Shown here: positions 25,537 to 62,888 of the stretch, in pieces
How positions within the stretch are numbered: position 1 is the stretch's first letter
How the letters are laid out: the number at the start of each line of letters is the position of its first letter
Source of the DNA: Asterias rubens
Lineage: Eukaryota
Direction: 5' to 3'
Length of the DNA: 64,000 bases
Assembly: GCF_902459465.1 (NCBI RefSeq)
Contig: NC_047070.1
Span: 1,922,001 to 1,986,000 of the forward strand
The notes under the pieces: model-generated
Told to the model about the DNA's origin: nothing
The model's database searches: none
The model's input: the letters and a program-made list of their open reading frames with translations, nothing else
Translations under genes and position numbers: made by a program

Positions 25537-25695
25537 CTGACCAACTATAGTTTCTTCAGTTCGACCAATCGCCTCGAGCCACCGCTCCCGCAGGACGGTG
25601 GGCCGCTTGGGCACGCGATAAAAATGGCGCGGGTCCTCGGTTCCTTTGTAGCGCGAACGAAACTTGCAATTAGGAAAACCGCATGTTGTCGGCAT
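25537..25695 (-). CDS. CTBP: First coding exon of a THAP-domain CtBP (N-terminal half of THAP zinc finger, 53 aa)
   Basis: Translates to MPTTCGFPNCKFRSRYKGTEDPRHFYRVPKRPTVLRERWLEAIGRTEETIVGQ, which has THAP hallmarks (CxxxxC, F..P, W) and closely matches my recollection of the C. elegans CTBP-1 N-terminus. Acceptor tctttttcttgtgtttacag at 25715-25716, in-frame TAG 18 nt before the ATG, donor CAG|GTATCG at 25536. It lies head-to-head with MAEA. THAP identity is high confidence; the CtBP assignment is inferred because the dehydrogenase exons are not in the window. Confidence 0.8.
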
Positions 25696-27182
25696 GACTT
25701 GAGGACAGTCCTACCTGTAAACACAAGAAAAAGACAGAAAAGAAAACAGATATTAAGTCTCCAGGATCAAAATTTGTCATTAAAAATTACCCTCTAGCAG
25801 ATTATTTTACCCTTTATCTGTGCACTGTATGTCCGTAATACATGTACATAGTTAACAAGCAAGACATCTTTAAGTAAACAGCCATTTTATTTATTAACCG
25901 TTGGGGTATTTTACCTCAAATTTAATTTCAACTTAAGGTTCAGGAAGTGGCAATTTTCCCCAACAAAACATCTACAAAAGGTGTGCCTGAGAGACAATTT
26001 CCCCTACCCCCTACCACCCCGCGTCCTCTCTACTCGATACACCACACCTAAAATATCAAGTCTCCTACCAAATACAATCCTTTTCATAAATATTGATTAC
26101 CAATGAGACTCCAAAAAGGGTCTCAATGAATATCAATAAGGAGACTAAATTAGGAAAAATGATACCATCGCAACAAAAATGATAAATAATACGAGTGGGG
26201 GACACAGCCCCACAAACAAGCCACGAGAGTTCATTGGTCTGTTTCAGTGTATCAAACTTCATCGACCAAGTATGGCCATTGCAGAACCCTATTCCAAGAT
26301 CAACATTATAAACTGTGGCACACCGCGGGCTAAAGATTCAAACTCAAAAGGAGATCGCAGTACGGCAAAATAGCTTTAGAAAAATGATACCTGGGGTAGT
26401 ACGATACCAAGTAACCATGGATATATAAAACTTATAAAAAGATAGTATTCCAGTGACTGTTTCACATTCAGGTGACAGCACTATTTTTCAATTGTTTATG
26501 GGTTCGTACAGCGAGGACAAGGTATGTATCCTCTTTTGATGGCCACACGTTTTTGCCTCTTTACTTCAGGCCAGACTGTTACAAAGCCACCGGCTCCAAG
26601 GACAAAAATCTATAGAAATTTTATTAGAGTAAGGGAGAGTGGATACTATGCTAGCCTGGGTTGCTAGGATTCTTCCTGGATGATCTGATGTTAAGGGTGT
26701 AGAGAGAGTATCCCAGGGTAGTGGTAGTTGGAATAATTCTGCAGGCCAAGGGGGAATTCACTTTTCCCTTGGGAGTTTGCATGGTATAATCACCAATGAA
26801 TAATGTAATATTGCCCCTCATTTGAGGGCTTTTTTTTTCCGAATCTTTTTCAAATTTTGTCCGAAAAAATGGGAAGACAATCAAGTTTGAATCATACTTT
26901 GGAAATTAAGTTGAATTTGAGACTTACTTTAACTGCTTAAAAAATCTCTGGACTTTATACCCAAAAAATATTTTTTTGTCAGATTCAATTTTAGCACAAT
27001 AATTCAATTGAACACTACCTAAGTACACTGAAGTTGTTTTGTGTATATATCCAGGCTATTTTGAGCAAATACATTTTGAAAATTTCAAACTTACGTATAA
27101 CTTGGGTGCTATCCTAGGAGATCACATTTTTTGAATGACAAGACGATTTTATTCATCTTTTAACAGTTGTACACAAGGTACT

Positions 27183-27558
27183 TTAAAGGGAAGGTACACG
27201 TTTGGTAACTACTCAAAACAAATATTAACTTAAAAAACTGACTTGGTAACGAGCATTGGAGAGCAGTTGATAGTATAAAACATTGTGGAAAACAACTCCC
27301 TCTGAAGTAACGTAGTTTTTGAGAAAGAGGTATTTTCTCACTAAAATAATAAAAGACTTCTAGCTAGAAGTCTTTTATACCCATCTGAAACACACAAATT
27401 CGTCTAACAAGGGTGTCTTTTGTTTCGACATTTTCTCGTAACTTTGATGACTGATTGAGCCCCAATTTTCACAGGTTTGTTATTTTATGCTCATGTTTGG
27501 ATACACCAAGTGAGAAGACTGGTCTTTGACAATTACCAATTGTGTGCCTTCCCTTTAA
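27183..27558. mobile_element. TTAA MITE (AGGGAAGGTACAC subfamily)
   Basis: TIRs plus TTAA; similar to 6282-6657. Confidence 0.85.
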
Positions 27559-29605
27559 GGCCTTACATAAAGATTACAACGCTAACTTGTGAACAAAATC
27601 TCTAGTAGCATTTTCTCTTTGTTACATCACCAGTAAACATTCGTTACATAAAAATAAATAAATAAAACAAAAAAATGGTTTTACCACCAAACAACTTGGC
27701 TGTTGAGTGTGAGAACGAAAAAACTTTCCAGTGAAAGTTTATATTAGACCTAATTTTTAAAATGGTTTTCTTTCGAAAAGTGTAAAAGACCAAACATGTT
27801 TGACTCTTTGGTGAGTGCATAGCTTGGAGGCACGTGACAGAATGTAAAGCCCTAACTACAATGTATTCCTTCCAATAACAACCATGCATGAATCCAGTTC
27901 AAATTGGAACACCACCAACGTAGAAAGGTGGTCAACACTAATATTGTGCTTAGCTTCTGAAAAGGACTCGTCTAACAAGCAAATGAATGGGTAATCACTG
28001 ACCCAAATATGTATTTGACACTGGATTAAACACATTCACAATGATGGTAATGAAGCGCAGAAGTTTCCATGGCTAAAGTTGGACTCTCAATATAAAAATG
28101 CATAATGGAATACCTTGAATGAATGAACCAGTTCCTCTGGAAGAATTGGTTCTTATGAATTTGTAAATTGGTGTTCTCCTTTTTCACCTGAAAGAGGTTA
28201 CTAGAGTAATGTATACATATTGTTAGGCAAGCAGTTCTTATATTATTCTGTATAGCTTGCATGTCTACAACAGATTTCAGTGGGGGCTTTTTGGGTCGCT
28301 AGGTGGCAGCCAACTTAACAAAGTAAATCCATTGTTCTCGGTAAAATGCGCACACTAAGAGATGCGTAAACAATGGAAATTCACCTGGTAAGTCTGCTGC
28401 CACCTAACGTTTTCAAAGTCTCACAAACTGATACTTATTGTTGGGCAAGGATGTCCTAGTAGTTTCTGTATACCTCATGAGTCTACAGATTTTAGACAAG
28501 AGTACAGTTACAGTAAAACATGGAGGTACACTATTAAGTTGTTGATTAACATCAATGTTGGCATGCATTTGCTGGATTATTGTAATACCTCATGGGCCAA
28601 CAAATTTTAGAGTACAGTTAATCTGTCCATCCATAGTAACACAATTGACAGTTTTCAAAGTATGAAAGAGTGTAGCCTTTTATGGCCTAAACAACCTGAA
28701 GTCTAAAGGGTGTTTTTTCTGTCGTTATTCTCTTGCAACTTCGATGACCCACTGAGTTCAAATGTTTACTTTATGCATGTGTTGAGATACACCAAGTGAG
28801 AATACTGGTCTTTGACAATTAACAAAGGTGTCCAGTGCCTTTGAAGTGAATGATTGTATATAATGTCTGCAGATTGTTGGTCAAATTCACGCACAATTCA
28901 AAACGCCCAGCAGAACCAGACCGATGTATCCACTTTCCACGAAAAGCTACAAAAAAGAGCACAGCGACAAGATTACATGAACTTTGCGGACCCGGACTAC
29001 CAATCCTTCCATGAGCTATGCTTCTAAAAACAGCACATGACAGGCAAGGGTACCAGTGGCATCCAATTATCATGATGTGCTTAGGGCAGAGAGGTCAGTA
29101 TTTCCTGTGGGGAGTTTTCAACTTCCCCGGTTTCCTTCCTGGCAAATAGGCCACTTCCACTGGGGTTCTAGGCCTGGGATGGTGGGGGGCTTCGAGTGAA
29201 AACACTTTCTAAAACCAAAGTACTGACATTTATGGAGACCACACCTCGCAGTGACATTTCTGAAATTTATACACCCAGGATCGAGTTAGTTGTTGTCTTT
29301 TTACATCTGGATTTGGAATGTGGAAGGTTTGGGAATTGGTATTTAAGTATTATTTAACCTCATGCTACACGCAACTTGCCTGTAATTTGATATTTGAGAG
29401 GGCAAGGCCAGTTTCAATTTGCAAAGGGCACTTCCATTGGAAAAACTTCAAGTATGGGAAATTTTTGAAGGGGCACCAAGGCCAAGCCAAGGGCAAGGAA
29501 GGCCGAGGCCTCTTTGTAATTCCATGCCTGACACAACATTCTATGATTGTTATTTGTAATTCCATGCCTGACACAACATTCTATGATTGTTATTTGTAAG
29601 ACCAG

Positions 29606-29764
29606 CCCCCGATTTCACGAAGCGCTGCGACGCGTCGCAAGTGCAAGTTGCGACCGGTTACACGTCGTAAGTTGCGATGCGTATGAAATCGTGTCTTAGG
29701 TCTGCGACGCATCGTAAACCCTACGATGCGTCGCTACTTGCAATGAGTTTCGTGAAATCGGGGG
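29606..29764. mobile_element. Harbinger-like MITE with perfect CAG target-site duplication (TSD)
   Basis: CAG|CCCCCGATTTCACGAA…TTCGTGAAATCGGGGG|CAG. Confidence 0.8.
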
Positions 29765-30149
29765 CAGGCCTGACACAACATTCTATGAATGTTATGATTA
29801 AGATTAATAACTAGTCATGAGACTTTACATATTATTATGGAATGCCCAGATATCCTCCACCTTCATACCCTTTCTATACTAAATTTGATCACAATATTTA
29901 TTACTGGTTAAGTTATCATAATAACATTCCACTGTGTCAAGTGGGGGTATCCTGCTGGAAAACATAGTCATTATTTCTTTCCATCTATTGTTCCACAGGG
30001 TACAGGAACTAAGAAACATTGGAAAATACAAACATTTTAAAATGATACAATGATTACACAAGACACAATGACAAAGTAAAACTTGCTGACAGTAACCTCC
30101 GCCCCCTTGTTGGATTACCAAGTGCGAACTAAATCATGATCGAGTGGAT

Positions 30150-30730
30150 CTGCTTAAAGTTCTGCCAGCAAACTACATACACATGTACATTGTACGCACA
30201 TTGTACATTGTCCTGACACTGGTCCCGGACCCACTATTGAGCCCCACCATTCCTGCCCCACCATTCCTGCCCCACCAACACTGCCCCACCAACACTGCCC
30301 CACCAACACTGCCCCAACGACACTGCCCAATAACCTCTACCCTACTACATTGTACTCAAACCCTATTGCCCTATCTGGACTCACTGACCAGCCCCACCAT
30401 TCCTGCCCCACCAACACTGCCCCAACACCACTGCCCAATCACCTACCCTACTACATTGTACTCAAACTATGCCACACTCTTGCCCTATCTGGACCCACTA
30501 TCAAGCCACACCATTCATGGCCCAACACTGTCTAATCACCTCAACCCTCCCTACTACGTTGTACTCAAACCCTGCTACATATTTTCCCTATCTGGGCCCA
30601 CTGTCCAGCCTCTACATTACTGGGCCACCAACACTGCCCCAACAGAACTGCCCCAACAACACTGCCCCAACAACACTGCCCCAACAACACTGCCCCAACA
30701 ACACTCTACCATACTGCTCAACTACATTGT
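30150..30730. repeat. C/A-rich composite tandem repeat (CCAACACTGCCC-type units inside larger degenerate units)
   Basis: Many ccaacactgccc(c)a units plus recurring ctacattgtactcaaac…gccctatctggac blocks. Confidence 0.8.
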
Positions 30731-30777
30731 AACTTCCCCCTCCTGGCCTTGCCCTCCCAAAAATTAAATTAAAGGCA

Positions 30778-30857
30778 TGTCTGCGCCTTGAACACCCAGC
30801 AGGGTGGATATGTGCGCATTACAAGTCTTATTATTATTATTATTATTATTATTATTT
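30778..30857 (+). mobile_element. Retroposon (L2/CR1-type) 3' tail ending in (TTA)n; also at ~7632-7697 and ~8722-8786
   Basis: Shared ctgcgccttgaaca.c.agcagggtggatatgtgcgc.tta.aagtc followed by (tta)n. Confidence 0.55.
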
Positions 30858-30911
30858 ATGTCCTCCACATAATACATGCCTGATACATGTAACTCACTGC
30901 CTCAATTGCCC

Positions 30912-30976
30912 CTGGCCAATACCTTGGTGCCCCTGGCCAATACCTTGGTGCCCCTGGTCAACACCTTGGTGCCCCT
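30912..30976. repeat. 21-bp tandem repeat x3 (CCCTGGCCAATACCTTGGTGC)
   Basis: Three adjacent copies; the sequence resembles the ccttggtgccc core of the CAGG-MITE family. Confidence 0.85.
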
Positions 30977-33900
30977 TAAAATGTTCCAATATAAATTTAG
31001 CAACATTAACATACACCTCCACACAGGTGATTTTGATTTCCTTCATAAAAATGTTAATAATCAAAATGACATAAACCAGAGAAATATAAAAAGCAAAGCT
31101 TTCTGCAATTAACAATAAATCATAATTTGACGACAACGCCACTTAATACAATGCACGACACTGTTGGGCCTGGCTATGAACCTTGTTTTTTCTCTGTCTC
31201 TCTTTTCCTGTTTTTCAATGCTGTAATACACACACCTACATTGTGCAGTAAACTGTGTGTTTTTTTTTTTGTTTTTTGGGGGGGGGGGGGTGCAAATTTA
31301 ATCTCCTAGATTATGCAAGTAGTACTTGAGATAAGAAAACAAAACAACTATATACATTAACATAAAATGTACATGAAGGTCAGTTATCCACCTCCATCTA
31401 TCAGTTTACTAAAAATAAAACATTCCTAAAAAATAATCACGAGATGGGCATGAAATTATAGAGCTGACCTGATATTGCCTTGGTGCCCTTGAAATGCCCC
31501 AGTAAGAATGTACAATTTCCTCATGTCATAGGGTGCCCTTTACAAAGGAGAAAATGCCTTGGTGCCCTTACCCTTTCAAACCCTGATAAAATACTTGGTA
31601 TGATAAATACATAGTAACACTGTGTCTAAATTAGCCGCTCCAATGTGGCTACGGCTTGATTCTCATGGTCTTGAAGCATAGAAGCACTATAGCAATAACC
31701 TTAGCAACAGCCACAGCTGTAGGCACCAACTCAGCCAGCCTAAATCGTAAAATACATAATTTTGCACAAAGTCTAAACAGACATTGTACTTGTTCATTGT
31801 CATGTCATACTTGTGTGTCGTCCTGCCTCAACAGTTCTTTGACACAGCTGTTTATTATCCATACTAAAAAAAATTTGTCAGGCAGGACTTGGGCAAACAT
31901 CACCAACTCTGCTAAGCTAACAGATTTTCTAAACAGAGAACAGATACCGGACCAATGTAACATGCAATTTGGGTATATTGTTTTAGACTGGTACTAAATT
32001 ATTTTCTGTAAGAACAGATAAATTGATTAAGTAACATTTCCTGCTCCATTTCAATGCTTGGTCCTGATACATTGTTAGGCAACTCATGCGAATTTATTGG
32101 TACACATGCAAGGTTTCCATTACCAGCTTAATTGAGTTGTTGCAGCGTCATCCCAACAGTCATACTGGTTAATTCAAGCTCCAAAAAACCAAGGGTTACC
32201 GGTGATAATCACACTCTGCATATGATGCTGCTTAAATACCTGTTTACAGGATTTGGTTGTGCAAATATAGCCACATCATTGACACACTGTATGCTACCCT
32301 TGCTTGTGACCCCAGCCCTCCATACAACAGAAAATTGTCAACCTGACACATGTGACTAGCCTTCCACTGGAAGACATGTACACACACACACACACACACT
32401 GCATATTAAAGGACCCCCAGCAAACAGGGTGTGGCTGTTCACTGGAGTGTACCGTTAGACCGTGTACTGTGCCGTGGAATTTGAGTAGTGCAGACTGTGT
32501 GTGTGGTGGTTCGCTTGTTATCTAGGTCTGAGCACGGTCTCAACACTGTACTTTGTACAGTGGTAATAGGAATCCAGTTCAATCCGTGACATTATGTCAA
32601 GGTTTTGTTGTACACAAGGAATTGTCTCCATGAATAAATGCAGCCAAACAAAATAATCTGGCAATGAAAGTGAAAAAAAAAATCAGAGAAACTAAGATTG
32701 TTTATATTAAGGGGGAAATGTTGTACAAACTGTGATCAGTAGGACCAACACATAATACAGTAAACATTAATAATGAGAATGTTCATTAATAAACTTTGCA
32801 TGGTAAGAAACCAACATAGCCAGCATGTTTACAGATTATGAAAATTGTATAAAAAGTTGTTTCAATCCCTGGGATTAAATAAAAAAAAAAAAAAAAAAAA
32901 ATAGTTGTTTTATATTTTTTTAAGGACATTAAAATGTACCCAGCCATACAGCGAACTGTTTTTGCAGAAGCATTAACCTTTTCATCATAATTAACAGAAG
33001 ACAGATTTGTAAAATTATTGATGTTAACAGTCCTAACAATCAACATTTTATAAACAGCAATGGTCTTAGCTTTGAATTGATGCAATTAGGTTATTGAAAG
33101 GCATACACAAGTAAGATAAATTACAACCAACAATGTTTGGTTTTAGCATTTAGGCTAACCATACACAATGTCATTCCTGTGAAAATAATGCACATAAAGA
33201 GGTTTTTCTTAAATACTTGTCCTCAAGTTGAAGAACACGTTGAAAAAAAAAAACCCACTGCATCTGCTTGCTACCCTCCATGAACATGAACTACGCCTTG
33301 CAGTGTTTAATCTTTCTTGATAATAATATTCCAAGATAGCTACACCTAGGTATGGTAGGCATGCAGTCACCATGACATCCACACCTCTTGTTGACAAGTG
33401 TACATACACGTAGTAGGTCCACACCAGCCACAGAGAAACGAAACAAACAACGGACATCGTTTCTTCAACATGGTTTACTATTTTATTTCTTTAAACCATT
33501 TCATCTGCAAAAATTGTAAGTGTTCTAAAGTATGACTAGAACATTTTAATCCCAATCTGGGACATGGTTCATAATAACATCCTCAAAATATACATGAAGG
33601 ACTGTATCGTGTAAGAAACAAGTGATTTTAAAACACACAAAAAATCCATTTAACTTTGAAAATCTGGCACCCCGGCGGTCTAGATAGCTCAGTTGGCTGA
33701 GCTCTGGCATTTTGATCCAGAAGTCAGAAGCTCAAGTCCCACTCAAGTCAATTTTTCTTTGTTCAACCACCCCCCCCCCCAAAAAAAAAGAATTATCACT
33801 TTAAATTTGTTACAAGTATATTTTAAACTCATAAGAAGCTGCCAACATTTACAATATTATATTTTGAAGATGTTTTCTTCAGCAACCTTGAGGTTTACAT

Positions 33901-33999
33901 AAAGTCTGATAAACGACAAACCAATTGTAAAAGTATGTTTAGTGTTCACCAACATCTCCCATGAGCCATGACTATCCATTCCTCTTTGCTAAACAGACC

Positions 34000-34383
34000 A
34001 TGAGATTTTGATACCTTTTGTAAGTTTTTGGCCATGAAATGAATCCCTACAGTGAATGAAGATGTATGCAATAAGTTTCAGCTTCATTATTAGTCGTCAA
34101 GTTTTTGAGAAAAAAAGAGCAAAAGTCATAGATCATTGTTTTAAGAAGAGTTGCTTATTACGTTGCACATGCTAAAATAATGTTCGTCTACTGATACAAA
34201 AACTATTTTTTGTGACAGTGGTTTACTCATTTCTCAAACGATACAGGCCTAACGCCCCAGCAAGTAACGTTTTAAGAGAAGCTTTCTACTTATAGTATCA
34301 TCATTATCTTTGAACAGTGTAAGTTTAATGTAAATCTGTGGACATTGTGTTTTGAGTCGTACAAAAAGTACCTTAACCCTTTA
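34000..34383. mobile_element. Second dispersed TTAA-type element family; sister copy at ~35662-36085
   Basis: Shared internal sequence (gaatccctac…gtgaatgaagatgtatg…gtcaagtttttgaga…aatgtaaatctgtgga); ends resemble TTAA(A/T)GGGTT.G.TAC. Confidence 0.65.
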
Positions 34384-34693
34384 ATGCAGTACATGTACTC
34401 TGTCATTGTTAAATTATCTTCAGAAACCGGTAAATGGTTGTACATCAATTGTTAAATTATAACACTGGACTCGGAAACAAACACAATTAAGCAACTCTGG
34501 AAAAGGTTGAGGTGCCTAGTTACTGCATGGTGAACACCTTGAAAGCATTTGTTAAGCTTTGTCAGTTACTAGGTAGAATGTAAATCATTGTACCACCGAA
34601 CTTCTATTACATGTTTGCTGTTTAAATCATCTACATGAACCGCCATGTTGTACTCAAATCCCACTCAAATCAATGCTACTCAAATCGAGGCTG

Positions 34694-34860
34694 GGGGCCT
34701 TTCTCAAACCTCAGCTTAGGATCCGGCTCCAGGCTCCTCGTACTGATGTTCCTGCGATTAGCGCTGCTCCAAAATGCAGGTTAAAGGCCACGCTACATAC
34801 GCAGCGCGCGGAGCCTAAGCCTGAGCCAGAGAGCCCTGGCCAAGGTTTGAGAAAGGCCCC
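34694..34860. mobile_element. GC-rich MITE (GGGGCCTTTCTCAAACCT TIR)
   Basis: 18-bp terminal inverted repeat. Confidence 0.75.
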
Positions 34861-37452
34861 ATGTGACAAATTCGACCAGTCCCTTTTTAGAGAATCAGCG
34901 TTCCAGATTGCTGCACAGCATAAAGTAGATAAGAAGACAATGGGTATGACCTCCTGAGGTCAACACATGTTGATGGATTATTCCTAAACACTAAACAGTG
35001 CCCCAGCACCTTACCACATGAACCAGCACAACATGTGCATGTTTACAAACCTATGTACAGTACAGGTGCATAAGAGTTGAGGAGCTGGAAGAACCAATGC
35101 TATGTATTTGATACACAGCGTTTACAGGCTAAAAAGTTAACCTTGAAGCAAGATTTGGTCAATACTGTTAGATACATAGAATAATAATACAGACAGTGTG
35201 TAATCTTCTGAGGGTAAGTAGAGTTGCAGGTAGTCCTTCTATTATTTTCAATCATCATGGGGAAAAACTAAACACAAGTGGCACACTATCCATTTGAAGT
35301 GACAATTTTATTTCAGAGATGTGTGGAGTTAAATTACTATAATTTTTACGGTGCCATTGTTCATAAACAACTGGCATTTTCAAGAGGGATTATATATTTA
35401 AGAGAGACTTCACGATACAACTTAAAAATAAACAATTTATCAACAACAGGGAAAAACTGACCTTTTCAAATGTCCCAGCAAGTCCAATCACCATCTTTTT
35501 TTGGGAGTATTTATAGGGCTAGTTCCTGTGTAAAATTTGTTTGTTTTGGGCAGGATAATTATCATTTCCTTTGCCTGCTCCTTAAATGGCATCATCTGAT
35601 AGCATCCGGTATTTTCAAGGCCAGACGTTAGGCTAAGTTGCCACTTACTGTTATCTCCTTCTTAATGGGTTTGATACCTTTTGTTTTTGGCAATGACATG
35701 AATCCCTACTCAGTGTGAATGAAGATGTATGTAACATAATCTATAGTTTCAGGTACTTTAGTTGTCAAGTTTTTGAGAGGAAAAAAAGTGAAAGTCACAG
35801 AGTGATGTTTTCAGGAGAGTCGCGTACACTTAAAATATGGTATTATTTTTTTATTACCAGTTATTGGTATTGTATTTGTACCAGTAATTGTAATAAATAT
35901 GTTCAGATTAAATGCTAAAATAATTTTCGTCTCCTGAGACAATAATTATTTTGTGACATTGTTTTGCCAATTTCTCAAAAAAACTCAGCACCTCAGCAAG
36001 TAATATTTCAAGGGAAGATGTCTACCATCATTATCTTTAGAATGTAAATTTAATGTAAATCTGTGGATATTGGGTTTTGTATCATACAAAAAGCAGGCCT
36101 GCATGCTTCGTTTTTGAAAGGGCAAGGGCATCAAGGCATTTCCTCCTCAGTAAAGGGCACCCTAAAAGGAAATTGTAAATTTCTACAGCACTGGAACATT
36201 TCGAGGACACCAAGGCAATGACCAGGGAGCATTGAGGCAAACGCCTTCGCTGCCTCCATGAAGTATCAGGATTGTATCATCTGAAAAAGTTCCCAACCCC
36301 TTTAATTTCAAATTCACTTATTCTCATCTGACGAATACTGAGCTGAGGTCAATTTCAAGAATCAAAGCTGTCTGTATCTTAATAAGAACAAAATGTACGG
36401 CAGCTAAGTGATGTCCACATACATCACAACAGCTAACTCCATTCTCATTTCCTTCTTGGACACCCAAGGTTGATCAATACAATCCAATTTCTCCTTCCAC
36501 TAATCAAACCTGATTGGCAATTCCTCAAACACACTTAGTAAACATCTTCACCTAGCTCCTTTGAATACATGCATAGTGAAAACACCGTCTCCAACAAGTC
36601 CGCAACACAAATTTAACTAATTCTGCAAAGTCTACTCAAGCTTGCAAGGAAAAAGGTTTAATTTTGTTGACAAGGTTGTTTTTTCCTTTTTTCCTTCTTC
36701 TTCTTTCCTATCCAAGGTTAAAAGGTGTCACTGGGTGTCCAAATTGCGCACTTACAGTTTTTACATGTATATTACAGAAAAAACAGGGTGTCTAAAAGAC
36801 ACCAAGACACTCCTCTGGCTAACTGGCTAAAGCCCGGTTCATACGCCTGCGAATGAGAATGCAAATTTTGACGTCACAGCCCTGTTTTTCGCTGCAAGAG
36901 TTTAACACATTTCAACTGTTGCAAATTATTTATTGCAAATTTGTGACGTCAAAATTTGCATTGCATTCAGCTCGGCTTGCATACGGCTCGTAATCGGCTC
37001 ACACTCGACTCGTATTCGGCTCGCATTCGCAGGAAGTATGAACCAAGCTTTAAAAAGACTGTTCCTATCCTTTTAGGGAGCCCATATTTGTTCTTAATTC
37101 ATCTTCTAAATATTTCCAATGGATGTGGTAGGATTTTCTTTCTTCTTTCCCCCTTTTTTTTTTGGGGGGGGAGGGATAATAATTCTCTATAATAATATTC
37201 CAATAACCTAATATGTACATGAGTGTTGTACAACCACGTATTCCCGAGGAAATAAGAGACCCCTTGCTTGAGTCTAGGCATCACACTCCATGGGGGTTGA
37301 ATAGGTTCAAGACTACACGGTCTGGGTCAAAGCATGGACCACCGAATGGTCAAACCTTAAACATGCTATAATTCATGACCATTTATGGCAAGTCCAATCA
37401 CATGGTTAAAATATCACCAGATTAACAAGGATTCTATTACAGGCTACACACT

Positions 37453-37838
37453 TTAAAGGCAGTGGACACTATTGGTAATTACTCAAAATAATTATTAGCA
37501 TAAAACCTTTCTTGTTGACGAGTAATGGGGAGAGGTTGATGGTATTAAACATTGTGAGAAACAGCTCCCTCTGAAGTGAGAAAGTTTTGAGAAAGAAGTA
37601 ATTTTCCACGAATTTGATTTCAAGACCTCAAGTTTAGAATTTGAGGTCTCAAAATCAACCATCTAAACGCAAACAACTTCGTGTGACAAGGGTGTTTTTT
37701 TCTTTCATTATTATCTCGCAACTTCGATGACCGATTGAGCTCAAATTTTCACAGGTTTGTTATTTTATGCATATGTTGAGATACACCAACTGTGAAGGCT
37801 AGTCCTTGACAATTACCAATAGTGTCCACTGCCTTTAA
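37453..37838. mobile_element. Main-family TTAA MITE copy
   Basis: TTAA|AGGCAGTGGACACTATTGGTAATT…AATTACCAATAGTGTCCACTGCCT|TTAA. Confidence 0.9.
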
Positions 37839-40800
37839 GAAGATTTAAATCTTGATATTTCAAATATTTAGAAGCGAAGTAAATTTGACGAAGTAAACTT
37901 GGCCGTTTTCACAGCGAATGTTTTGCAGCGAATTTCCCAGTAGTTGTCCACAACCCAACTGTTGCAAATTATTCGTTTAGAATTTGTGATGTCAAAATTT
38001 GCTTCGCATTCGCAGGAAGTATAAACCAGACTTTAGACACAAAGCAGTTCCAAGCTTCAAGCCAACAGTTGACTCCTTTTTCCCTTCTTCATTTCCAATG
38101 CAATTGTCCTGGTCCCTAAATGGCCAAATGAATGTGATTGATCCACATCCTGTGTAGCATATGAATTACTCATGCTTGGTCAAGCTTACACCACATGTAT
38201 AATGCTACCATTTATAGATGATGGGACACATGGCATAACATGTGAACCAAGTAACTCGGACGTCAAACGGATGCAGAAAATCAGCTCAGATGTCAATATC
38301 TCTGATTCCATGAAAATGCAATTTTAGCCACTCATAATCCTTTCAGATGCCTAGTCATGCACAGAGCATACACCCATCAACCAATAAACAACGCAGCTAA
38401 GCATTTAAAAGAAATTGCTTAGCAAAAGCTCATATCACATGGAAAGAAATATCCAGAGTAGGAACTGCTTATAGATCATGAGCGGGGCCTAATTCTATAG
38501 AACTGCTTAACTCATGTTGAAATATTTAAACTGCCAGCATCCATTTGTTCGTTTCCATTCAAACTATTTTCCTCTCTAAGGCCTATACGACAAAATTCTA
38601 ACAGATATTTTCTATTAACTTTGTTTTTAGTCACACTAGAATAATCCAGGCCAACTCAAGATTGTCTTTGAAGATACGGATGAACTGTTTCAAAGACAGT
38701 ACATTACGCAGGAAGATAAATCTTGGAAAATCTGAGAGGAATTCTTAGTTTTTTACCCCAGTAGGTAATCCTTCTGTTAAATGCCACAGATTGAAATCAA
38801 TGAGTTGCTACAAGCAGTTTTATACGATCTGTTACACGGTCATATCTACATGTGTAAAATTTTCACATTCAATCACAGAGTAATGCTGGTAGAAACTATT
38901 CCTTTCCTTGGTGTCTGACATCCATTTAGTAGAGCATCGTAAAATGCTCATTAAAACCAAATCCCTAATCCAGAGGGATTTTCCCCTGCAGTAAAGGAGT
39001 ACATGTATGGACTGATAGGCTGTTGGTAGCGTAAACAGTATCAGAATCACATGTACTGATTACTGAATGAACAGCGTATGTGCAGTACACACGAGTCTCT
39101 GTAACCTCTGGCTAAAACCCAAGCCATTCAAACCTCAATCATCGTAGACTGCCTTTTTTTTTTAAGATTCCCTTTTGATTATAATTTGTTTCCAAACTAC
39201 TCCTGGCGATTTGTTAAATGTGCCATCGACAAGTAATTTATGACAGAAAAGAAGTTCGTTCCAATGGGTAAAATGTCTAGCGAGGTCCTAACTCTGACAT
39301 AAATCAAATCAGTTACATATTTTGGAATCTTTGCTCTCGAGAGCAGAGGCCGCCTAAATCAGTCGAATATCAATGTCCCATACAAAGCAGTGTACATACT
39401 TTGGGTGAATTTTAAAAAGAATTAACCATACACCAATGGTTTGCCTGGTATCAGGCTTTTTATGAGCAAACAAACTAATTAAAAAGCAAGCATAAATCTA
39501 CAGAAATCAGACAGGATATCGTCAATATAGAATTTCACCTGTAAGAGGGCAAGGCCGTAGTTTTCATTTCGCAAAGGGCACTTCAATTAAAAAATCTTTA
39601 AGTCTATGGAGGGGACATTATGAAGGGGGCACCAAGGCCAAGAGGGAAATGGAGGCCAAGGCCTCTGACAATTCCAGGCCTGTACATTACATCAATACAT
39701 ACAGTTACCAGAATCCGTCTATCAAAATCCACTGCCAGCTATCCACTGTGGTAGTCTAGAATCTGATTTGATATCCCAATGACAAGCTTTGTATGCTTGG
39801 CTGCATACACCGACCAATCAAACTCTGAAGGAGGCATACAGGGGGAAGGGATTTGAAGGTTTTGGGAATTAAAATCATACAGATTTTCCAAATAAGGACA
39901 TTAAATTTTGTACGTATACAAACATTTACAGGCCTGTATGCTTTTTGAAAGGGCAAGGGCACCAAAGCATATTCTCTATTTTCTATGAGGAAATAGTAAA
40001 TTTCTCCTCGAGCATCTCTAGGGCACCAAGGCAAAGACCAGGGGGCATAAAAGCAATTGTCTTTGTTGCCTCTGTGAAGTAACAGGCCTGCATACATGTT
40101 TTGGTGCACTGCTTAAAAATTCAACGATGCAACATGTTTTTCTTTAAGATGTCCAGCCCGTTATTTTCAAGGCCTAAGAATCTCACCCTTTCACAAGAAT
40201 TAAGATGAAACCTTTCTGGTTCTAAATACATTGTAGAATCACAGGTGTTGCTGTGAGCCTGGTGCGTTGATTAGTGTGTTTGAAGTCATTTTGAAGTAAT
40301 TTTACTTGATTGTGAAATCGCTTTGGGCTAGGTGGAGACCCTGTTGTGCAATGAGTGCATTATGATTGTTTTCAGAATTTCAGAGCTGCCAATATTTTGC
40401 GTCTTGCAATCAGGGAGATATTTCAAATTACATTTTAACATAATTGGGAACAAGTTTTACAACCAGGGAGATTTTCAAATTTGCGTGTCTAGTCTATTTT
40501 CAAACTTCAAAATTACAACTCATGAAAGGTACGTTTTTACAGATTCAATTATTTTAAATTCACTTTAATCCTAGCTACCTCCCCTTAAATTTGTTTAAAT
40601 AAGATGTGCTCATTCATACTACATAGTTACAACAAACAAGTTGTTTTATTGATTGGGCCAGTCCACTGATTAGACTGCAGTGTGTGTGTGTGTAGAGACT
40701 CCTTGCATGTATGGTAGTGTGTATCTAACTTCCACCCATCGTTAATATTACCACCAGTACAGAAAAAGACCCTCTGCTCAATGAATGACTGACATATTGA

Positions 40801-42877
40801 ATCATTGTAAAATGCCAATTATTTCTTGGACTCTCCCCCCCCCCCCCGCCTTTCTCTGTTTTATTGTGAGTAACGATGGATGATAATGAATGAAGAGGCT
40901 AGTTTGTCTGATGTATGATCACAAATCCCACCGGTGGATTGGCCTCTGGATGATCGATGCTCAACCAACACGACAACAATTCCACTGGTTTGGGGAGAAT
41001 TTCAGTTCTTCTCTATATAATTATGTCACACTGACCATGGAGGAAAAAAAGACTGACCGGCATAAATTTCCATAAACAGGCATAAACCAATATGAAACAT
41101 TTCCATGTTTCTCTTTCCCAGAATAACAATGTTCTCAACAATATTAGACCTGTATGCTTCGTTTTAGAAAGGGAAAGGGCACCAAGGCATTTTTTCCTTG
41201 GTAATTATAAAATTTTCTAGCAGAGCATTTCAAAGACAGTGATCCGGAGGGCAAGAAGCAGTCTCTTTAGTATCAGATATGTAACACTTCAAATAAGAAG
41301 CAAGTTGTTGGTGTTGAAACAACATAACATTGAAATCATGAACAACAAAATAGGTGAACATTGTTAATTCTGGCTGGTAGCTCACTTCTAAAAGTAAAAC
41401 TTGATTTCACATTTCACGGCAAAGTTAATAATGGTTTTGTTTGGCTCAATTTAAAATGAGTAAAATTAATGGAGTGCAAAATGCTTTACACGTAGTCTCA
41501 CTGTAGAAGAATACAGGAAAATACTCATAAATGGTTGGTTAAAATAATATCAATCTCAAACTCGACAAACTGTTGACATCCTGGGGAAATGAAAATCGCA
41601 GTAATGACTGGGAACATTAGTTATTTTAAGTTTACTGTCTCACTTGTTTGCATTCAATTATTTTGTGGGTGGTGCTTGGGTTTTTTTTTCGAGTTGGGGG
41701 GGGGGGGGGGACACCGGACCAGGGATAACCAAGTGGTATGTGATTTATGTGCAATCAATTTTGTCTTGTTTCCATTCCAACCAATGAAAGGCAGTTTCCA
41801 AATTGGTGTCTGCGGCTATGGCTGCGGCTACAGCTGTTTCTCAGAATGTTGCAATGTGCATCCTATGCTTTATGGTCATCCGAAGCTAGCCACAGCCACT
41901 TTTTCAGACAACCAAACTGGGGATGGAAAGAGAAAATAAGATGATCACTTGTTATAAAAAATATCAGAGTCATGCTGGATCCGAAAAATCCCTTTAAAAG
42001 TGGTGGTCAGATATGGGAATTTTTCCAATTAAATCAATTAATAATTATATTTAATATAAAAAAACACTCGCCTACACCGCCAAAACATGGGCCTAACCAT
42101 CTCAATATAAATAGAATTAAGCAGCCCAATTATTACACAAAATTATTTTCAAAAATTTGACATTTATTTCATGTTACGAATGAAAATAACTGCTTTCACT
42201 TGTAACTTAAATAATTTTAAACAGTTTCAGTAGAATTAAGTAACCCAATGATTACCCAATTTTTATATAATAAATTTGACATTATTATTCCCATCATGCC
42301 CATGTCACCGTGTAAGAATAAAACTCAAGACATTTCGTCTTTTTACAGCTGATAAAAACAGATAAGGTTTCAACAACTTGGACTGTCTGCCACGAAAATA
42401 AAATCACATGTGCACTTATTTCAATAACACAACTCACATTTGGGGTCACAAGTGTAAATCCTGCCGATAAATAAACCAATGACGACGTGATTTACTCACG
42501 TCTTTGCTTTTATTTCATCTTAAAACAGTCTGTAAATATTTGGTATTTTATCTCAATTTATATTGAAATATTTCAAAATGCTTGAATATTAATAAGTATA
42601 CACCAAATCCACCCAAGGTCACGGTAATAAAATCAAATTTAAGTTTCTACATAGCGCAATCACTCTCGCCATGTTTAACGCACTTAACGCAAAAGCACCA
42701 CCCTCAAGTTTACGACCGCACAACATCACTCAACATTCTGCACAAACAACCATAATTATCATTAACTTTTGGTGGGGTCATAAAGCAATAAACCAATTGT
42801 GCTTCCTTGCTTACTAAGTACCTACAAAATGGCAAAAGACAACGGCCTGAGAGGGGACTGTAAATAGGAGAACATAC

Positions 42878-47847: not shown

Positions 47848-47955
47848 GTACACAATGAGTTGGAAAAATGTCTGGACAGTTCTTCAACTACCGTCGGGAC
47901 GGTCGTCAATATTCTTGATTCAATGGTGGATAAATTGAGTGCTCTAAAAAGAAAG
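47848..47955 (+). CDS. MAEA: MAEA exon 3 (VHNELEKCLDSSSTTVGTVVNILDSMVDKLSALKRK)
   Basis: Acceptor gttgttctag, donor AAG|GTACAA, 108 nt, frame continuous. Confidence 0.92.
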
Positions 47956-47966
47956 GTACAATCTTA

Positions 47967-48692: not shown

Positions 48693-48896
48693 GCAAATGA
48701 GGCAATAACCCAAGAAGAGGACAGTGCTCGAGTTGTAAAACGTCGTCTGGAACATCTAAAGGAATATGAAGGAGCAACAGGAGCCGCCCTGGCCCAGTGG
48801 AAGAAGAAACGAGTCGACCGTATGCTGGTGGAATATTTCCTACGAGCGGGTTACTATGAAACTGCAGTCAAGTGTGCGAGGCATTCTAATATAGAG
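48693..48896 (+). CDS. MAEA: MAEA exon 4, including LisH motif (…WKKKRVDRMLVEYFLRAGYYETAVKCARHSNIE)
   Basis: Acceptor gtaattttag, donor GAG|GTGAGA, 204 nt; LisH signature. Confidence 0.95.
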
Positions 48897-49806: not shown

Positions 49807-49929
49807 GATCTCACCAATATAGAGCTATTTCTAGTAGCAAAAGAGGTAGAGGAGTCCTTATTAAGACGTGAAACCTCAGCATGCCTCAATTGGTGTCATG
49901 ACAACAAATCAAAACTTAGGAAAATCAAG
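49807..49929 (+). CDS. MAEA: MAEA exon 5, CTLH domain ([41 protein letters not shown])
   Basis: Acceptor ttttcttcctcag, donor AAG|GTAAGA, 123 nt. Confidence 0.95.
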
Positions 49930-50409: not shown

Positions 50410-50595
50410 AGCACGCTAGAGTTCAACCTACGAACACAAGAATTCATTGAGATGATCTTACTAAACAAGCGTCTAGAAGCAGTACGCCATGCTCGTAAGT
50501 TCTTCAGCTCGCTAGAAGGAGAGCAGCTATCTGAGGTTCAAAGGGTCATGGGTCTGTTAGCGTTTCCTGCTGATACTGATGTCTCACATTACAAG
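50410..50595 (+). CDS. MAEA: MAEA exon 6, CTLH/CRA region ([17 protein letters not shown]…[16 protein letters not shown])
   Basis: Acceptor tgattacag, donor AAG|GTAAGA, 186 nt. Confidence 0.95.
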
Positions 50596-51114: not shown

Positions 51115-51248
51115 GAATTATTGGACGGTCATCGCTGGCAGCAGATTGTTGATCAATTCCGAGAGGAGAACTACAAGTTATATCAACTAAATAACACACC
51201 CGTCCTAACTGTATCACTAGAGGCAGGACTAGCAGCTATGAAAACACC
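51115..51248 (+). CDS. MAEA: MAEA exon 7 (ELLDGHRWQQIVDQFREENYKLYQL…LEAGLAAMKTP)
   Basis: Acceptor tttgtttcttgaag, donor CC|GTATCC (phase 2), 134 nt. Confidence 0.93.
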
Positions 51249-52345: not shown

Positions 52346-52376
52346 TATCGCTGCTAACACATATGATTTGAACTGC

Positions 52377-53140: not shown

Positions 53141-53205
53141 GCAACATAATGAATGAGCACAATCCACCCATGATGCTTCCGAACGGCTATGTGTATGGTG
53201 AATGT
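53141..53205 (+). CDS. MAEA: MAEA exon 9 ([22 protein letters not shown])
   Basis: Acceptor ttttcttccttgtcaag, donor TGT|GTAAGT, 65 nt; [12 protein letters not shown] motif. Confidence 0.95.
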
Positions 53206-53543: not shown

Positions 53544-53645
53544 TCCCTAAAAAGCATGGCGATTGAAAACAATGGCATTGTCATCTGCCCAAAGACAAGA
53601 GACAAATTCACCGTGGACCAGATAGAGAAGGTATTTATTATGTGA
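53544..53645 (+). CDS. MAEA: MAEA exon 10 (SLKSMAIENNGIVICPKTRDKFTVDQIEKVFIM*)
   Basis: Acceptor gttgtttacag, ends with TGA; the EKV.IM C-terminus is typical of MAEA. The joined CDS is 1164 nt, giving 387 aa plus stop. Confidence 0.95.
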   Translation, partial: SLKSMAIENNGIVICPKTRDKFTVDQIEKVFIM

Positions 53646-60723: not shown

Positions 60724-60748
60724 CTGCACGGTTGTTTTATGTTCTTAC

Positions 60749-60829
60749 ATGTCCAAAGTAAACGCCATGATCTTGAAATGAATGTCTATTGTCGTGCACA
60801 GAGAAGGAGTTTTCCATGTCATAGGTCAT
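60749..60829 (-). CDS. TEX36: TEX36-like exon 3 with HDNR motif (MTYDMENSFSVHDNRHSFQDHGVYFGH)
   Basis: Acceptor cttgtattttttcag, donor CAT|GTAAGA; the FSVHDNRHS motif is diagnostic of the HDNR/TEX36 family. Confidence 0.9.
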
Positions 60830-61892: not shown

Positions 61893-62137
61893 AGGGAGGT
61901 TTAGCTGCACATTACGCGAGCAAAAAACGTGAACCTGAACGTCAGAAAATGGTGTCGTTTCTAGGTGACGTCACCACTTTGGGCTTATTTCATGCCCATG
62001 TATGATGTCTGCACACACGTACCTGACGTAAGGAAATGGTATTTTCACGTATGCTTAAAACGTGAGATTTTTACAACAAAATTTTCTGACATTCACGTTC
62101 ATGTTTTTGCTCGCAGAACGTGTGGCTAAACCTCCCT
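61893..62137. mobile_element. Palindromic MITE (AGGGAGGTTTAGC TIR), TEX36 intron 2
   Basis: Nested inverted repeats gcgagcaaaaaacgtgaac / gttcatgtttttgctcgc. Confidence 0.7.
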
Positions 62138-62177
62138 GATGACGTTGAAACTGCATCCAAAGTGTATTGTAACATAC

Positions 62178-62318
62178 CTCCATCTTTGTATTGAACTGTT
62201 CTGGAGGGGGTTTAGGGCGCTGGGGTTGTGTCTCCCGTAGTGTCGTGTTCAGCATATTTCCAGTACTAGTCATTGTGTCTCTCATCAATGGAGGATCAGA
62301 CCAGCCTCTGGTGCGGAA
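62178..62318 (-). CDS. TEX36: TEX36-like exon 2 (FRTRGWSDPPLMRDTM…PKPPPEQFNTKME)
   Basis: Acceptor ttttttcttttcag, donor GAG|GTATGT, 141 nt, phase 0-0. Confidence 0.85.
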
Positions 62319-62837
62319 CTGAAAAGAAAAAACATATTTGTAATACGTGTTATGAAAGCACCCCATTTAAATAGTTTACAAATTGAGAAAATACTCCTTT
62401 AAAAAAAAAAATAAAAATAAAATATAAACAAGAATTACAAACCCTCAGTTATAAATGCTAATTATGTCTGATAGTTTATGATCAACAATTGAGCTGATAT
62501 TATTATTATTATTGTTATTATTTATTTGGCCATTTCACAAAAAAAAATAACAATACATGTCGTAGTTGCAATAACGTAACCCTCCTGCCGACGACGACAG
62601 GACTCCGGGAGGATTACGTTACCTCAACTAACGTTGACAATATTGACACAGAACTCAAGTCTTGTGCTATTTGAAACAATATTTCAAATAATATTTATGC
62701 CTATTCAATTTGTTTATATTTTTAATCAGTCGTACTTTTTAAAATAATAATAGCCTATTATTAGGCCTATTTTGATAAAAATAATTTTTATTTTGAGAAG
62801 TTATTTAAACTTTAAAGAAACAAAAACACAAACTTAC

Positions 62838-62888
62838 CCATATTCCATCATTACTTGCTGACGGGGCACACTGCCTTGACTTCGGCAT
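62838..62888 (-). CDS. TEX36: TEX36-like exon 1 (MPKSRQCAPSASNDGIW)
   Basis: Donor TGG|GTAAGT; resembles the vertebrate TEX36 N-terminus (M.K.R…P…DG.W) as recalled. Confidence 0.8.

What the first reader, a model, noticed from the sequence alone, without database searches (positions are those of the whole stretch)
25537..62888. CtBP(-)–MAEA(+)–TEX36(-) cluster may be the pre-duplication ancestor of the human CTBP1 and CTBP2 neighbourhoods
Seen in the sequence: a THAP-CtBP-type exon head-to-head with MAEA, followed by a convergent TEX36-like gene. From recalled knowledge (verify): human CTBP1 is head-to-head with MAEA at 4p16.3, and human CTBP2 is followed by TEX36 in the same orientation at 10q26. 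Inference: this locus keeps the ancestral three-gene block that split by reciprocal loss after vertebrate genome duplication (TEX36 lost beside CTBP1, MAEA lost beside CTBP2). The long CtBP introns fit a genomic-regulatory-block type constraint.
Basis: partly seen in the sequence, partly recalled or inferred. Interest (0 to 1): 0.8.

Follow-up and report, generated by a model that had tools for sequence, protein, structure and literature searches.

The report
Conserved CtBP–MAEA–TEX36 gene neighbourhood
In this sea-star genome the corepressor gene CtBP, the ubiquitin-ligase gene MAEA and the sperm-tail gene TEX36 sit side by side, and this looks like the arrangement from which the human CTBP1–MAEA and CTBP2–TEX36 neighbourhoods descend: a real but fairly ordinary case of conserved gene order.

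Summary
The window is chromosome-scale contig C10 of a 417.6 Mb sea-star genome, probably Asterias.

**The three genes**
- The first coding exon of a THAP-CtBP gene lies on the minus strand at 25537-25714. The rest of the gene lies 32-46 kb further left, outside the window.
- A complete 10-exon, 387-aa MAEA gene lies on the plus strand at 45964-53645.
- A 4-exon, 199-aa TEX36/HDNR gene lies on the minus strand at 62888-59796. Spliced contigs in public runs confirm its structure.

**What the comparisons show**
- CtBP and MAEA are head-to-head in amphioxus (about 1 kb apart) and in a teleost (about 6 kb apart). Published tables list CTBP1 and MAEA as neighbours in human. That pair is clearly ancestral to deuterostomes.
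- The tail-to-tail MAEA/TEX36 pair is shared by two sea stars and a brittle star.
- A mouse gene table lists Tex36 directly after Ctbp2.
- BCCIP, FAM53, TACC and UVSSA orthologues all lie on the same sea-star chromosome.

**Verdict**
The three-gene ancestral block with reciprocal loss is plausible (about 0.6). For TEX36 it rests on one invertebrate clade plus mammals, and I found no TEX36 in the 3.2 kb available after amphioxus MAEA. The regulatory-block (GRB) idea is not supported: between two sea stars only exons are conserved. This is a new example of a well-known kind and of modest interest. The only earlier scan note is on this same window.

The parts
1..25536 (-). Part of the 32-kb intron between THAP-CtBP coding exons 1 and 2. 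The intron continues left of the window to C10:1915477.
   Evidence: tblastn of the THAP-CtBP proteins P0037 and P0089 puts the next exon at window -6523. ORFs here are only repeats and a minisatellite.
25537..25714 (-). First coding exon of THAP-CtBP: the N-terminal half of the C2CH THAP zinc finger, with the ATG at 25695
   Evidence: Splice signals. Pfam THAP E=1e-4. 77-94% identity to over 50 clusters, including annotated THAP-CtBP proteins. 93% identity to Acanthaster CtBP isoform X2.
25715..45963 (.). 20.2-kb divergent interval between the THAP exon and the MAEA start codon. It should hold the untranslated first exon or exons and the promoter of CtBP, which I did not locate.
   Evidence: An acceptor site directly upstream of the THAP exon implies an upstream exon. 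No Pfam-bearing ORFs. CpG-rich stretch just before the MAEA ATG.
45964..46002 (+). MAEA coding exon 1 (MADLKALEHATLK)
   Evidence: matches amphioxus and Acanthaster exon 1
47103..47180 (+). MAEA exon 2
   Evidence: 89% aa identity to amphioxus
47848..47955 (+). MAEA exon 3
48693..48896 (+). MAEA exon 4 (LisH region)
49807..49929 (+). MAEA exon 5 (start of CTLH)
   Evidence: Pfam CTLH
50410..50595 (+). MAEA exon 6 (CTLH)
   Evidence: Pfam CTLH 64 bits; human MAEA in PDB E=1.6e-22
51115..51248 (+). MAEA exon 7 (CTLH/CRA)
   Evidence: Pfam CTLH 29.5 bits
51805..51929 (+). MAEA exon 8 (start of the RING-like zinc finger, CPVC)
53141..53205 (+). MAEA exon 9
53544..53645 (+). MAEA exon 10 with stop codon
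58392..60122 (-). Last exon of the TEX36-like gene. The coding part is 60122-59796 including the stop codon. The rest is 3' UTR reaching at least 58392.
   Evidence: Pfam HDNR 35.9 bits. 96% aa identity to Asterias amurensis TEX36-like. Spliced contig X13 record 9.
60749..60829 (-). TEX36-like exon 3, carrying the HDNR motif
62178..62318 (-). TEX36-like exon 2
62838..63100 (-). TEX36-like exon 1. The ATG is at 62888 and the coding part is 62888-62838. The 5' UTR runs at least to 63100, the end of the stretch laid.

Best explanation
The window holds a conserved piece of gene order, not a molecular machine. A single pre-duplication CtBP gene is transcribed leftwards. Its first coding exon encodes half of an ancient THAP zinc finger. 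MAEA, a subunit of the CTLH ubiquitin ligase, is transcribed rightwards from a start 20 kb away. A TEX36/HDNR gene, reported in the literature as a sperm-flagellum microtubule inner protein, converges on the MAEA 3' end.

Shown: the divergent CtBP/MAEA pair is ancestral to deuterostomes and survives in vertebrates as CTBP1/MAEA.

Inferred (about 0.6):
- TEX36 was already linked to this pair before the vertebrate genome duplications.
- The CTBP1 copy of the block then lost TEX36 and the CTBP2 copy lost MAEA.
- That would leave TEX36 as the next gene upstream of CTBP2, beyond a large gene-poor interval.

Inferred and weaker:
- The CtBP/MAEA pair is most likely held together by divergent transcription from a shared or closely spaced promoter region, as in 5'-5' conserved microsyntenic pairs. 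Enhancers inside long introns are the less likely cause.
- TEX36 has probably stayed alongside passively, because it is close by.
For: **Gene identities**
- Searches identify the genes from single exons.
- The THAP-CtBP proteins P0037 and P0089 map colinearly across the locus.
- The full-length TEX36-like protein of the sister species scores 96.4 bits against HDNR.

**Expression of TEX36-like**
- Spliced contigs match all three junctions, including one from an RNA library.

**CtBP/MAEA head-to-head**
- Amphioxus L022: a 401-aa MAEA runs from 8959 down to 3261 on the minus strand, and THAP-CtBP starts at 10001 on the plus strand.
- Teleost L025: MAEA exon 1 starts at 4045 on the minus strand, and CtBP1 starts at 10001.
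- Human order is CTBP1-C4orf42-MAEA (PMC3132460).

**MAEA/TEX36 tail-to-tail**
- Acanthaster L033 and the brittle star Amphiura L032 both show it.

**Mammals**
- Mouse order is Zranb1-Ctbp2-Tex36-Mmp21 (PMC8621576).
- The human CTBP2 region includes TEX36 and EDRF1 (PMC6143271).

**Paralogy and macrosynteny**
- NKX1-1 and FAM53A lie near CTBP1; Nkx1-2 and Fam53b lie near Ctbp2.
- The single BCCIP, FAM53, TACC and UVSSA loci of this genome all lie on C10, which is 4.9% of the genome. The chance of 4 out of 4 is about 6e-6.

**Single CtBP in invertebrate deuterostomes**
- PMC9907507.
Against: - TEX36 linkage is documented in only one invertebrate clade (Asterozoa).
- An HMM of echinoderm TEX36 proteins found nothing in the 3.2 kb available downstream of amphioxus MAEA.
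- No MAEA lies within 10 kb upstream of CtBP in a hemichordate, a crinoid or an annelid, and none lies next to CtBP in a nematode or a cestode. The pair is therefore not universal, or the spacing is larger there.
- In mouse, Ctbp2 and Tex36 are about 0.6 Mb apart.
- NKX1 and FAM53 lie on opposite sides of CTBP1 and CTBP2 relative to gene direction, which requires at least one inversion.
- Gnathostomes had three CtBP paralogues (PMC9907507), so the loss history is more complex than a two-way split.
- The strands of human CTBP2 and TEX36 were not verified here.
- The CtBP promoter exon was not located, so a shared promoter in the sea star is not shown.
Confidence: 0.6

Rival explanations
1. Only the CtBP/MAEA pair is ancestral. 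TEX36 lay on the same ancestral chromosome. It came to sit next to MAEA in the sea-star and brittle-star lineage, and independently next to CTBP2 in vertebrates, through local rearrangements.
For: - There is no TEX36 signal in the 3.2 kb after amphioxus MAEA.
- Ctbp2 and Tex36 are 0.6 Mb apart in mouse.
- Strong macrosynteny raises the chance that any two genes of this linkage group end up near each other.
- The NKX1/FAM53 arrangement shows that inversions did happen around CTBP1 or CTBP2.
Against: - By my rough estimate, even within one linkage group of a few hundred genes, TEX36 becoming the immediate neighbour twice, on the same side of CtBP and (from memory) on the same strand, has a chance of about 0.5-2%.
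- The pair is stable across two echinoderm classes.
Confidence: 0.3
2. The block is a genomic regulatory block. CtBP enhancers sit in the introns of MAEA and in the long CtBP introns. This forbids breakpoints, and erosion of the MAEA copy beside CTBP2 created the CTBP2-TEX36 gene desert.
For: - Bystander erosion after the duplications is a documented source of gene deserts next to regulatory genes (PMC7530604).
- CtBP here has a 32-kb first coding intron.
- Mouse Ctbp2-Tex36 is a 0.6 Mb gene-poor interval.
Against: - In the Asterias-Acanthaster comparison of 25000-64000 against the 22-kb Acanthaster locus, matches fall on coding exons apart from two short repeat-like hits. No conserved non-coding blocks appear in MAEA introns or in the MAEA-TEX36 spacer.
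- In amphioxus the two genes are only about 1 kb apart and MAEA spans under 6 kb. That looks like a shared promoter, not a large regulatory landscape.
- Neither microsynteny paper names this pair in its main text.
Confidence: 0.15
3. The THAP exon belongs to a separate THAP gene and is not spliced to CtBP. CtBP and MAEA would then not be direct divergent neighbours here.
For: - No RNA read across the 32-kb intron was examined here.
- The exon is 32 kb from the next one.
Against: - The exon encodes only the first half of the C2CH finger. The missing half (LRICSCHF...) lies on the same strand, directly before the CtBP core exons.
- Annotated proteins of Acanthaster, Anneissia, Glandiceps, Branchiostoma, nematodes and flatworms join exactly these parts.
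- The donor phase fits.
Confidence: 0.03

Closest known systems
Conserved ancestral microsyntenic pairs (CAMPs) in 5'-5' orientation (Irimia et al. 2012, PMC3514665)
   Same: These are non-paralogous neighbouring genes kept adjacent and divergently transcribed across phyla. Here that is CtBP/MAEA in an echinoderm, a cephalochordate and vertebrates, with about 1 kb spacing in amphioxus.
   Different: I could not check whether this pair is already in the published lists, because the supplements are not held. It was not seen in the nematode, cestode or annelid loci. The sea-star promoter arrangement is not resolved.
Dismantling of ancient gene pairs after the vertebrate whole-genome duplications, with loss of the bystander gene and formation of a gene desert (Touceda-Suarez et al. 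2020, PMC7530604)
   Same: One duplicate (CTBP1) keeps the partner MAEA. The other (CTBP2) lacks it and is flanked by a large gene-poor interval.
   Different: A third gene, TEX36, would here be lost from the other copy, giving a reciprocal pattern. No relic exons or duplicated conserved elements have been shown. CtBP is a corepressor, not one of the DNA-binding developmental factors studied there.
THAP-domain CtBP corepressors (C. elegans CTBP-1; Nicholas et al. 2008, J Mol Biol, pmid 18005989, cited from reference lists only)
   Same: An N-terminal C2CH THAP finger is fused to the CtBP dehydrogenase core. The sea-star THAP exon is about 79% identical to the nematode one.
   Different: In the sea star the THAP finger is split over two exons 32 kb apart and is probably one of several alternative N-termini. 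The sea urchin and sea cucumber isoforms P0127 and P0125 start at other first exons.
Human 4p16.3 / 10q26 paralogous regions (FGFR3/FGFR2, TACC3/TACC2, CTBP1/CTBP2, NKX1-1/NKX1-2, FAM53A/FAM53B)
   Same: The sea-star orthologues of CtBP, TACC, FAM53, UVSSA and BCCIP share one chromosome, as expected for the unduplicated counterpart.
   Different: That paralogy is long known at chromosome scale (from my own knowledge). The new element is only the fine-scale three-gene order.

Membership tests
THAP-CtBP corepressor | N-terminal C2CH THAP zinc finger | tested here: met
   The exon at 25537-25714 matches Pfam THAP positions 1-43. The second half, with the C-x2-H (RICSCHF), is at C10:1915379-1915477.
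THAP-CtBP corepressor | CtBP dehydrogenase core with the RPLVALLDGRDC motif on the same strand, downstream | tested here: met
   PF02826 scores 122 bits at C10:1901570-1901866. Human and rat CtBP1 and CtBP2 are the top solved-structure hits, E about 1e-20. The locus is colinear with P0037 and P0089.
THAP-CtBP corepressor | Transcript evidence that the THAP exon is spliced to the CtBP exons in this genome | not tested
Support comes only from annotated orthologues.
MAEA (CTLH E3 ligase subunit) | LisH/CTLH/CRA region followed by a C-terminal RING-like finger, and best match to MAEA rather than RMND5 | tested here: met
   Pfam CTLH hits on three exons. The only solved-structure hits are MAEA. The full 387-aa open reading frame has canonical splice sites. 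Acanthaster and Amphiura products have the same length.
TEX36 / HDNR (PF15115) | Profile match above the curated cut-off, including the HDNR motif | tested here: met
   The last exon alone scores 35.9 bits against a 27-bit cut-off. The HDNR exon scores 23.1 bits. The A. amurensis protein, whose last exon is 96% identical to ours, scores 96.4 bits over profile positions 1-154. NCBI names the orthologues 'testis-expressed protein 36-like'.
TEX36 / HDNR (PF15115) | Single orthologue in the genome, and expressed | tested here: met
   It is the only HDNR locus in G000. Spliced contigs appear in four runs, one of them an RNA library.
TEX36 / HDNR (PF15115) | Testis or sperm-flagellum expression, or location inside axonemal microtubules | not testable with these tools
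   The literature reports sea urchin TEX36 as a sperm flagellar microtubule inner protein (PMC10973386). Tissue of the runs is not given. No solved chain matches. The language-model neighbours are ciliary inner proteins, which is only a lead.
Conserved ancestral microsyntenic pair (CtBP/MAEA) | Adjacency and orientation conserved across several phyla | tested here: met
   Seen in the sea star (this window), amphioxus and a teleost, with human adjacency from PMC3132460. Not seen within 10 kb in a hemichordate, a crinoid, an annelid, a nematode or a cestode.
Ancestral three-gene block with reciprocal loss after the duplications | All three genes linked in at least two independent unduplicated outgroups | tested here: inconclusive
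   Asterias, Acanthaster and Amphiura show it, but they form one clade. For amphioxus only 3.2 kb beyond MAEA was available, with no TEX36 hit.
Ancestral three-gene block with reciprocal loss after the duplications | The two vertebrate regions are paralogous and each keeps a complementary neighbour | tested here: met
   Literature tables give CTBP1-MAEA with NKX1-1 and FAM53A nearby, and Ctbp2-Tex36 with Nkx1-2 and Fam53b nearby. Sea-star macrosynteny on C10 agrees. Human strand orientation is from memory only.
Genomic regulatory block | Conserved non-coding elements of the regulatory gene inside the bystander gene | tested here: not met
   blastn of Asterias against Acanthaster over MAEA and TEX36 gives exon-only matches. 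The CtBP introns could not be compared.

The most novel reading that the evidence does not exclude
A three-gene block, CtBP(-) MAEA(+) TEX36(-), existed in the deuterostome ancestor. The vertebrate duplications resolved it by complementary losses. The several-hundred-kb gene-poor interval between CTBP2 and TEX36 would then be the eroded remnant of a second MAEA gene that still carries CtBP regulatory DNA. The locus would be a worked example of desert formation flanked by a retained marker gene.
Probability: 0.2. Interest if true: 0.45.

Novelty: new member of a known kind. Interest (0 to 1): 0.3.

Why it matters
- It gives a concrete, checkable pre-duplication reference for the CTBP1 and CTBP2 neighbourhoods. 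The most recent survey of CtBP evolution did not consider gene order (PMC9907507).
- It could help assign the three gnathostome CtBP paralogues by their neighbours.
- It also shows that the THAP first exon of CtBP is one of the most conserved parts of the gene across bilaterians.
- Conserved divergent gene pairs and differential loss after the duplications are both well described. The finding therefore adds an example, not a principle.

Tried and rejected
- **Homologue search with the last TEX36 exon.** It returned only a fragment, P0001, because the tool's length filter excluded the 199-aa proteins. A second search with P0001 found them.
- **No solved structure matches TEX36**.
- **Full-length MAEA proteins could not be retrieved.** No single exon is long enough for the length filter, and I did not type the spliced sequence. 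Amphioxus, hemichordate and sea urchin MAEA loci could therefore not be looked up from the MAEA side.
- **Acanthaster CtBP (P0089)** is not on record in the contig index.
- **HMM of six echinoderm TEX36 proteins** against six-frame ORFs of the amphioxus, hemichordate, crinoid, teleost, nematode and cestode loci found nothing.
- **tblastn of sea-star MAEA and TEX36** against the annelid, hemichordate and crinoid flanks found nothing.
- **UROS (HEM4)** was not detected in the genome by exon-wise search, so it gives no synteny information.
- **Supplementary tables** of the two microsynteny papers are not held, so prior listing of CtBP/MAEA could not be checked.
- **The teleost 'CtBP1 isoform X1' (P0149)** carries a THAP domain of a different type, not the ancient MPTTCGFPNCKF exon. 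I rejected it as evidence that vertebrates keep that exon.
- **Flank to the right of the window (60 kb).** It holds an LDLa/EGF mucin-like membrane gene, very large tandem arrays and an ORF that looks to me like a PC-esterase, but no EDRF1 or UVSSA. Microsynteny therefore does not extend further on that side.

Full report
**Where the window lies.** The window is G000:C10:1922001-1986000 of a 417.6 Mb genome in 150 contigs. It contains no N, has about 37% G+C and is rich in repeats. The genes found are intron-rich animal genes. The TEX36-like protein is 96% identical in its last exon to that of Asterias amurensis. Runs holding the sequence include starfish samples. The organism is therefore a sea star, most likely an Asterias species.

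**CtBP.**
- On the minus strand, 25537-25714 is a clean exon. It has a polypyrimidine tract and acceptor just upstream, an in-frame TAG at its start, the ATG at 25695, 53 codons (MPTTCGFPNCKF...EETIVGQ) and a CAG|gtatcg donor.
- It matches the first half of Pfam THAP.
- An exhaustive search of 1.84 billion representative proteins found 65 hits, 53 of them below 1e-10. Identity was typically 77-94% over all 53 residues.
- The long hits combine THAP with both 2-hydroxyacid dehydrogenase domains. They come from nematodes and flatworms, and some are named C-terminal-binding protein.
- A second search added annotated THAP-CtBP isoforms from Acanthaster, the crinoid Anneissia, the acorn worm Glandiceps, Branchiostoma and an annelid.
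- I fetched 50 kb to the left of the window. On the same strand lie the second half of the THAP finger (LRICSCHF...), the RPLVALLDGRDC exon and the dehydrogenase exons.
- The genome's best PF02826 hit is there too. The best solved-structure matches are CtBP1 and CtBP2.
- A nematode THAP-CtBP and the Acanthaster protein both map colinearly from window 25695 to C10:1901240. The Acanthaster protein is 89-98% identical.
- The acceptor in front of the THAP exon implies a further untranslated exon upstream, which I did not locate.

**MAEA.** Ten coding exons on the plus strand run from 45964 to 53645. All have GT-AG borders and they encode 387 residues. Three exons hit Pfam CTLH. A single 65-residue exon finds only human MAEA among solved structures, at E=1.6e-22. 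The start codon is 20.2 kb from the THAP exon and points away from it.

**TEX36.**
- The HDNR motif occurs once on the minus strand, at 60785-60796.
- The last exon alone passes the curated cut-off of Pfam HDNR.
- This is the only HDNR locus in the genome.
- Orthologues named 'testis-expressed protein 36-like' were recovered from Asterias amurensis, Acanthaster and the brittle star Amphiura. They score 81-100 bits over the profile from position 1.
- Mapping gives four coding exons and 199 residues.
- Contigs from four public runs, one of them a metatranscriptome, join 60122|60749, 60829|62178 and 62318|62838 exactly. They extend the last exon to 58392 and the first beyond 63100. The gene is therefore real, spliced and transcribed.
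- The literature reports sea urchin TEX36 as a microtubule inner protein of sperm flagella (PMC10973386). Mouse Tex36 is a four-exon, testis-enriched gene that is dispensable for fertility (PMC7401030).

**Gene order elsewhere: CtBP and MAEA.**
- In amphioxus, a 401-residue CTLH gene whose exons match sea-star MAEA one by one lies head-to-head with THAP-CtBP, about 1 kb away.
- In the teleost Lampris, MAEA exon 1 (MAVQETATQLSMALKVQEYPTLK) starts about 6 kb from the annotated start of CtBP1, on the opposite strand.
- A published table of human 4p16.3 lists SPON2, CTBP1, C4orf42, MAEA and KIAA1530 in that order (PMC3132460).
- No MAEA was found within 10 kb upstream of CtBP in Glandiceps, Anneissia or the annelid Lamellibrachia. 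None lies next to CtBP in a nematode or a cestode.
- The flank limit makes the first three uninformative. The last two are fast-rearranging genomes.

**Gene order elsewhere: TEX36.**
- In Acanthaster and in Amphiura the gene is followed, 4-10 kb downstream, by a convergent 387-residue CTLH gene, which tblastn confirms as MAEA.
- In mouse the listed order is Nkx1-2, Lhpp, Fam53b, Zranb1, Ctbp2, Tex36, Mmp21, Uros, Bccip (PMC8621576).
- A human study names TEX36 and EDRF1 as the other genes of the CTBP2 region (PMC6143271).
- An HMM built from six echinoderm TEX36 proteins found nothing in the 3.2 kb available after amphioxus MAEA.

**Chromosome-scale context.** The single loci for BCCIP, FAM53, TACC and UVSSA in this genome all lie on C10, at 20.37, 15.98, 4.55 and 4.51 Mb. 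C10 is 4.9% of the genome, so four out of four by chance is about 6e-6. Their human counterparts sit at 4p16.3 or 10q26 (TACC placement is from my own knowledge). C10 is thus the unduplicated counterpart of that known paralogous set. This makes common descent of the two human neighbourhoods certain at large scale. It also raises the background chance of any two of these genes being near each other.

**Reading.**
- The CtBP/MAEA divergent pair is ancestral to deuterostomes (about 0.95).
- That TEX36 belonged to the same block, and that the vertebrate copies lost TEX36 and MAEA reciprocally, is the simplest account of the data. TEX36 would otherwise have to become the immediate upstream neighbour of a CtBP gene twice, which I estimate at roughly 0.5-2% given the shared linkage group.
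- It still rests on one invertebrate clade plus mammals, so I give it about 0.6.
- NKX1 and FAM53 lie on opposite sides of CTBP1 and CTBP2, which implies an inversion. Gnathostomes had a third paralogue, CtBP1-like (PMC9907507). The history is therefore not a simple two-way split.

**Mechanism of conservation.**
Between Asterias and Acanthaster, the matches in the MAEA-TEX36 part fall on coding exons, apart from two short repeat-like hits.
- The 1-kb spacing in amphioxus points to a shared or closely spaced divergent promoter, the commonest class among published conserved pairs (PMC3514665).
- Bystander loss creating deserts is documented in general (PMC7530604), but not for this locus.

**Novelty.** Main-text searches did not turn up CtBP/MAEA/TEX36 microsynteny. 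The supplementary lists of conserved pairs could not be read. THAP-CtBP proteins have been known since Nicholas et al. 2008 (reference seen). The finding is a new, well-documented example of a known kind.

Noticed in passing
window 25537-25695 (-): The 53-residue THAP exon of CtBP is 77-94% identical across sea stars, nematodes, flatworms, an annelid, amphioxus and acorn worms. That is far more conserved than a typical THAP domain and suggests a fixed DNA target.
   Followed up: partly
P0032, P0033, P0034, P0036 (flatworm proteins): Trematode proteins of 570 to about 1060 residues begin with the same THAP exon but show no dehydrogenase domain in Pfam. Schistosoma japonicum P0111 and the cestode proteins still do. 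This suggests a strongly diverged or truncated CtBP core in flukes.
   Followed up: no
L025:10001-47648 (Lampris incognitus): The teleost 'CtBP1 isoform X1' starts with a THAP domain of a different sequence type (MTRSCCAINCTN...), not the ancient exon. It is either a lineage-specific first exon or an annotation fusion with a THAP gene lying between MAEA and CtBP1.
   Followed up: no
G000:C10:1915286-1915477 (window -6714 to -6523): The end of the second THAP exon (KQKKPKRPRMSVDRIVEG, followed by IRHP in the next exon) resembles the CtBP2-specific N-terminus of vertebrates as I remember it. If so, the vertebrate first exon would be a remnant of this exon. Not tested.
   Followed up: no
G000:C10 at 4.51, 4.55, 15.98 and 20.37 Mb: The UVSSA, TACC, FAM53 and BCCIP orthologues all lie on the same chromosome as the window. 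This is macrosynteny with human 4p16.3 and 10q26.
   Followed up: partly
window 57988-58578, 60155-60745 and 60943-61533: High-copy interspersed repeats, with contig depth thousands of times the background, lie inside the introns of the TEX36-like gene and just past the mapped end (58392) of its 3' UTR. A partial tRNA match at 60273-60330 (-) suggests a tRNA-derived SINE. The same repeat translations recur near 29400, 36100, 39900, 48200-48600, 51300-51650 and 55550-55760.
   Followed up: partly
window 4503-6050: A minisatellite of about 45-bp units, open in several frames, lies in the large CtBP intron.
   Followed up: no
L027-L028 (G000:C10:2001900-2008200): More than 6 kb of short-period tandem repeat (translating as TDAT / LQLM / SCSI runs) lies about 16 kb to the right of the window. 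It follows an LDLa/EGF/mucin-like membrane protein gene (L026). Acanthaster also has a gene with an LDL-receptor class A domain upstream of TEX36.
   Followed up: no
run X3 (seawater metatranscriptome), window 60059-62318: A spliced TEX36-like mRNA fragment of this sea star, or a close relative, is present in a seawater RNA sample, possibly from shed sperm or larvae.
   Followed up: no
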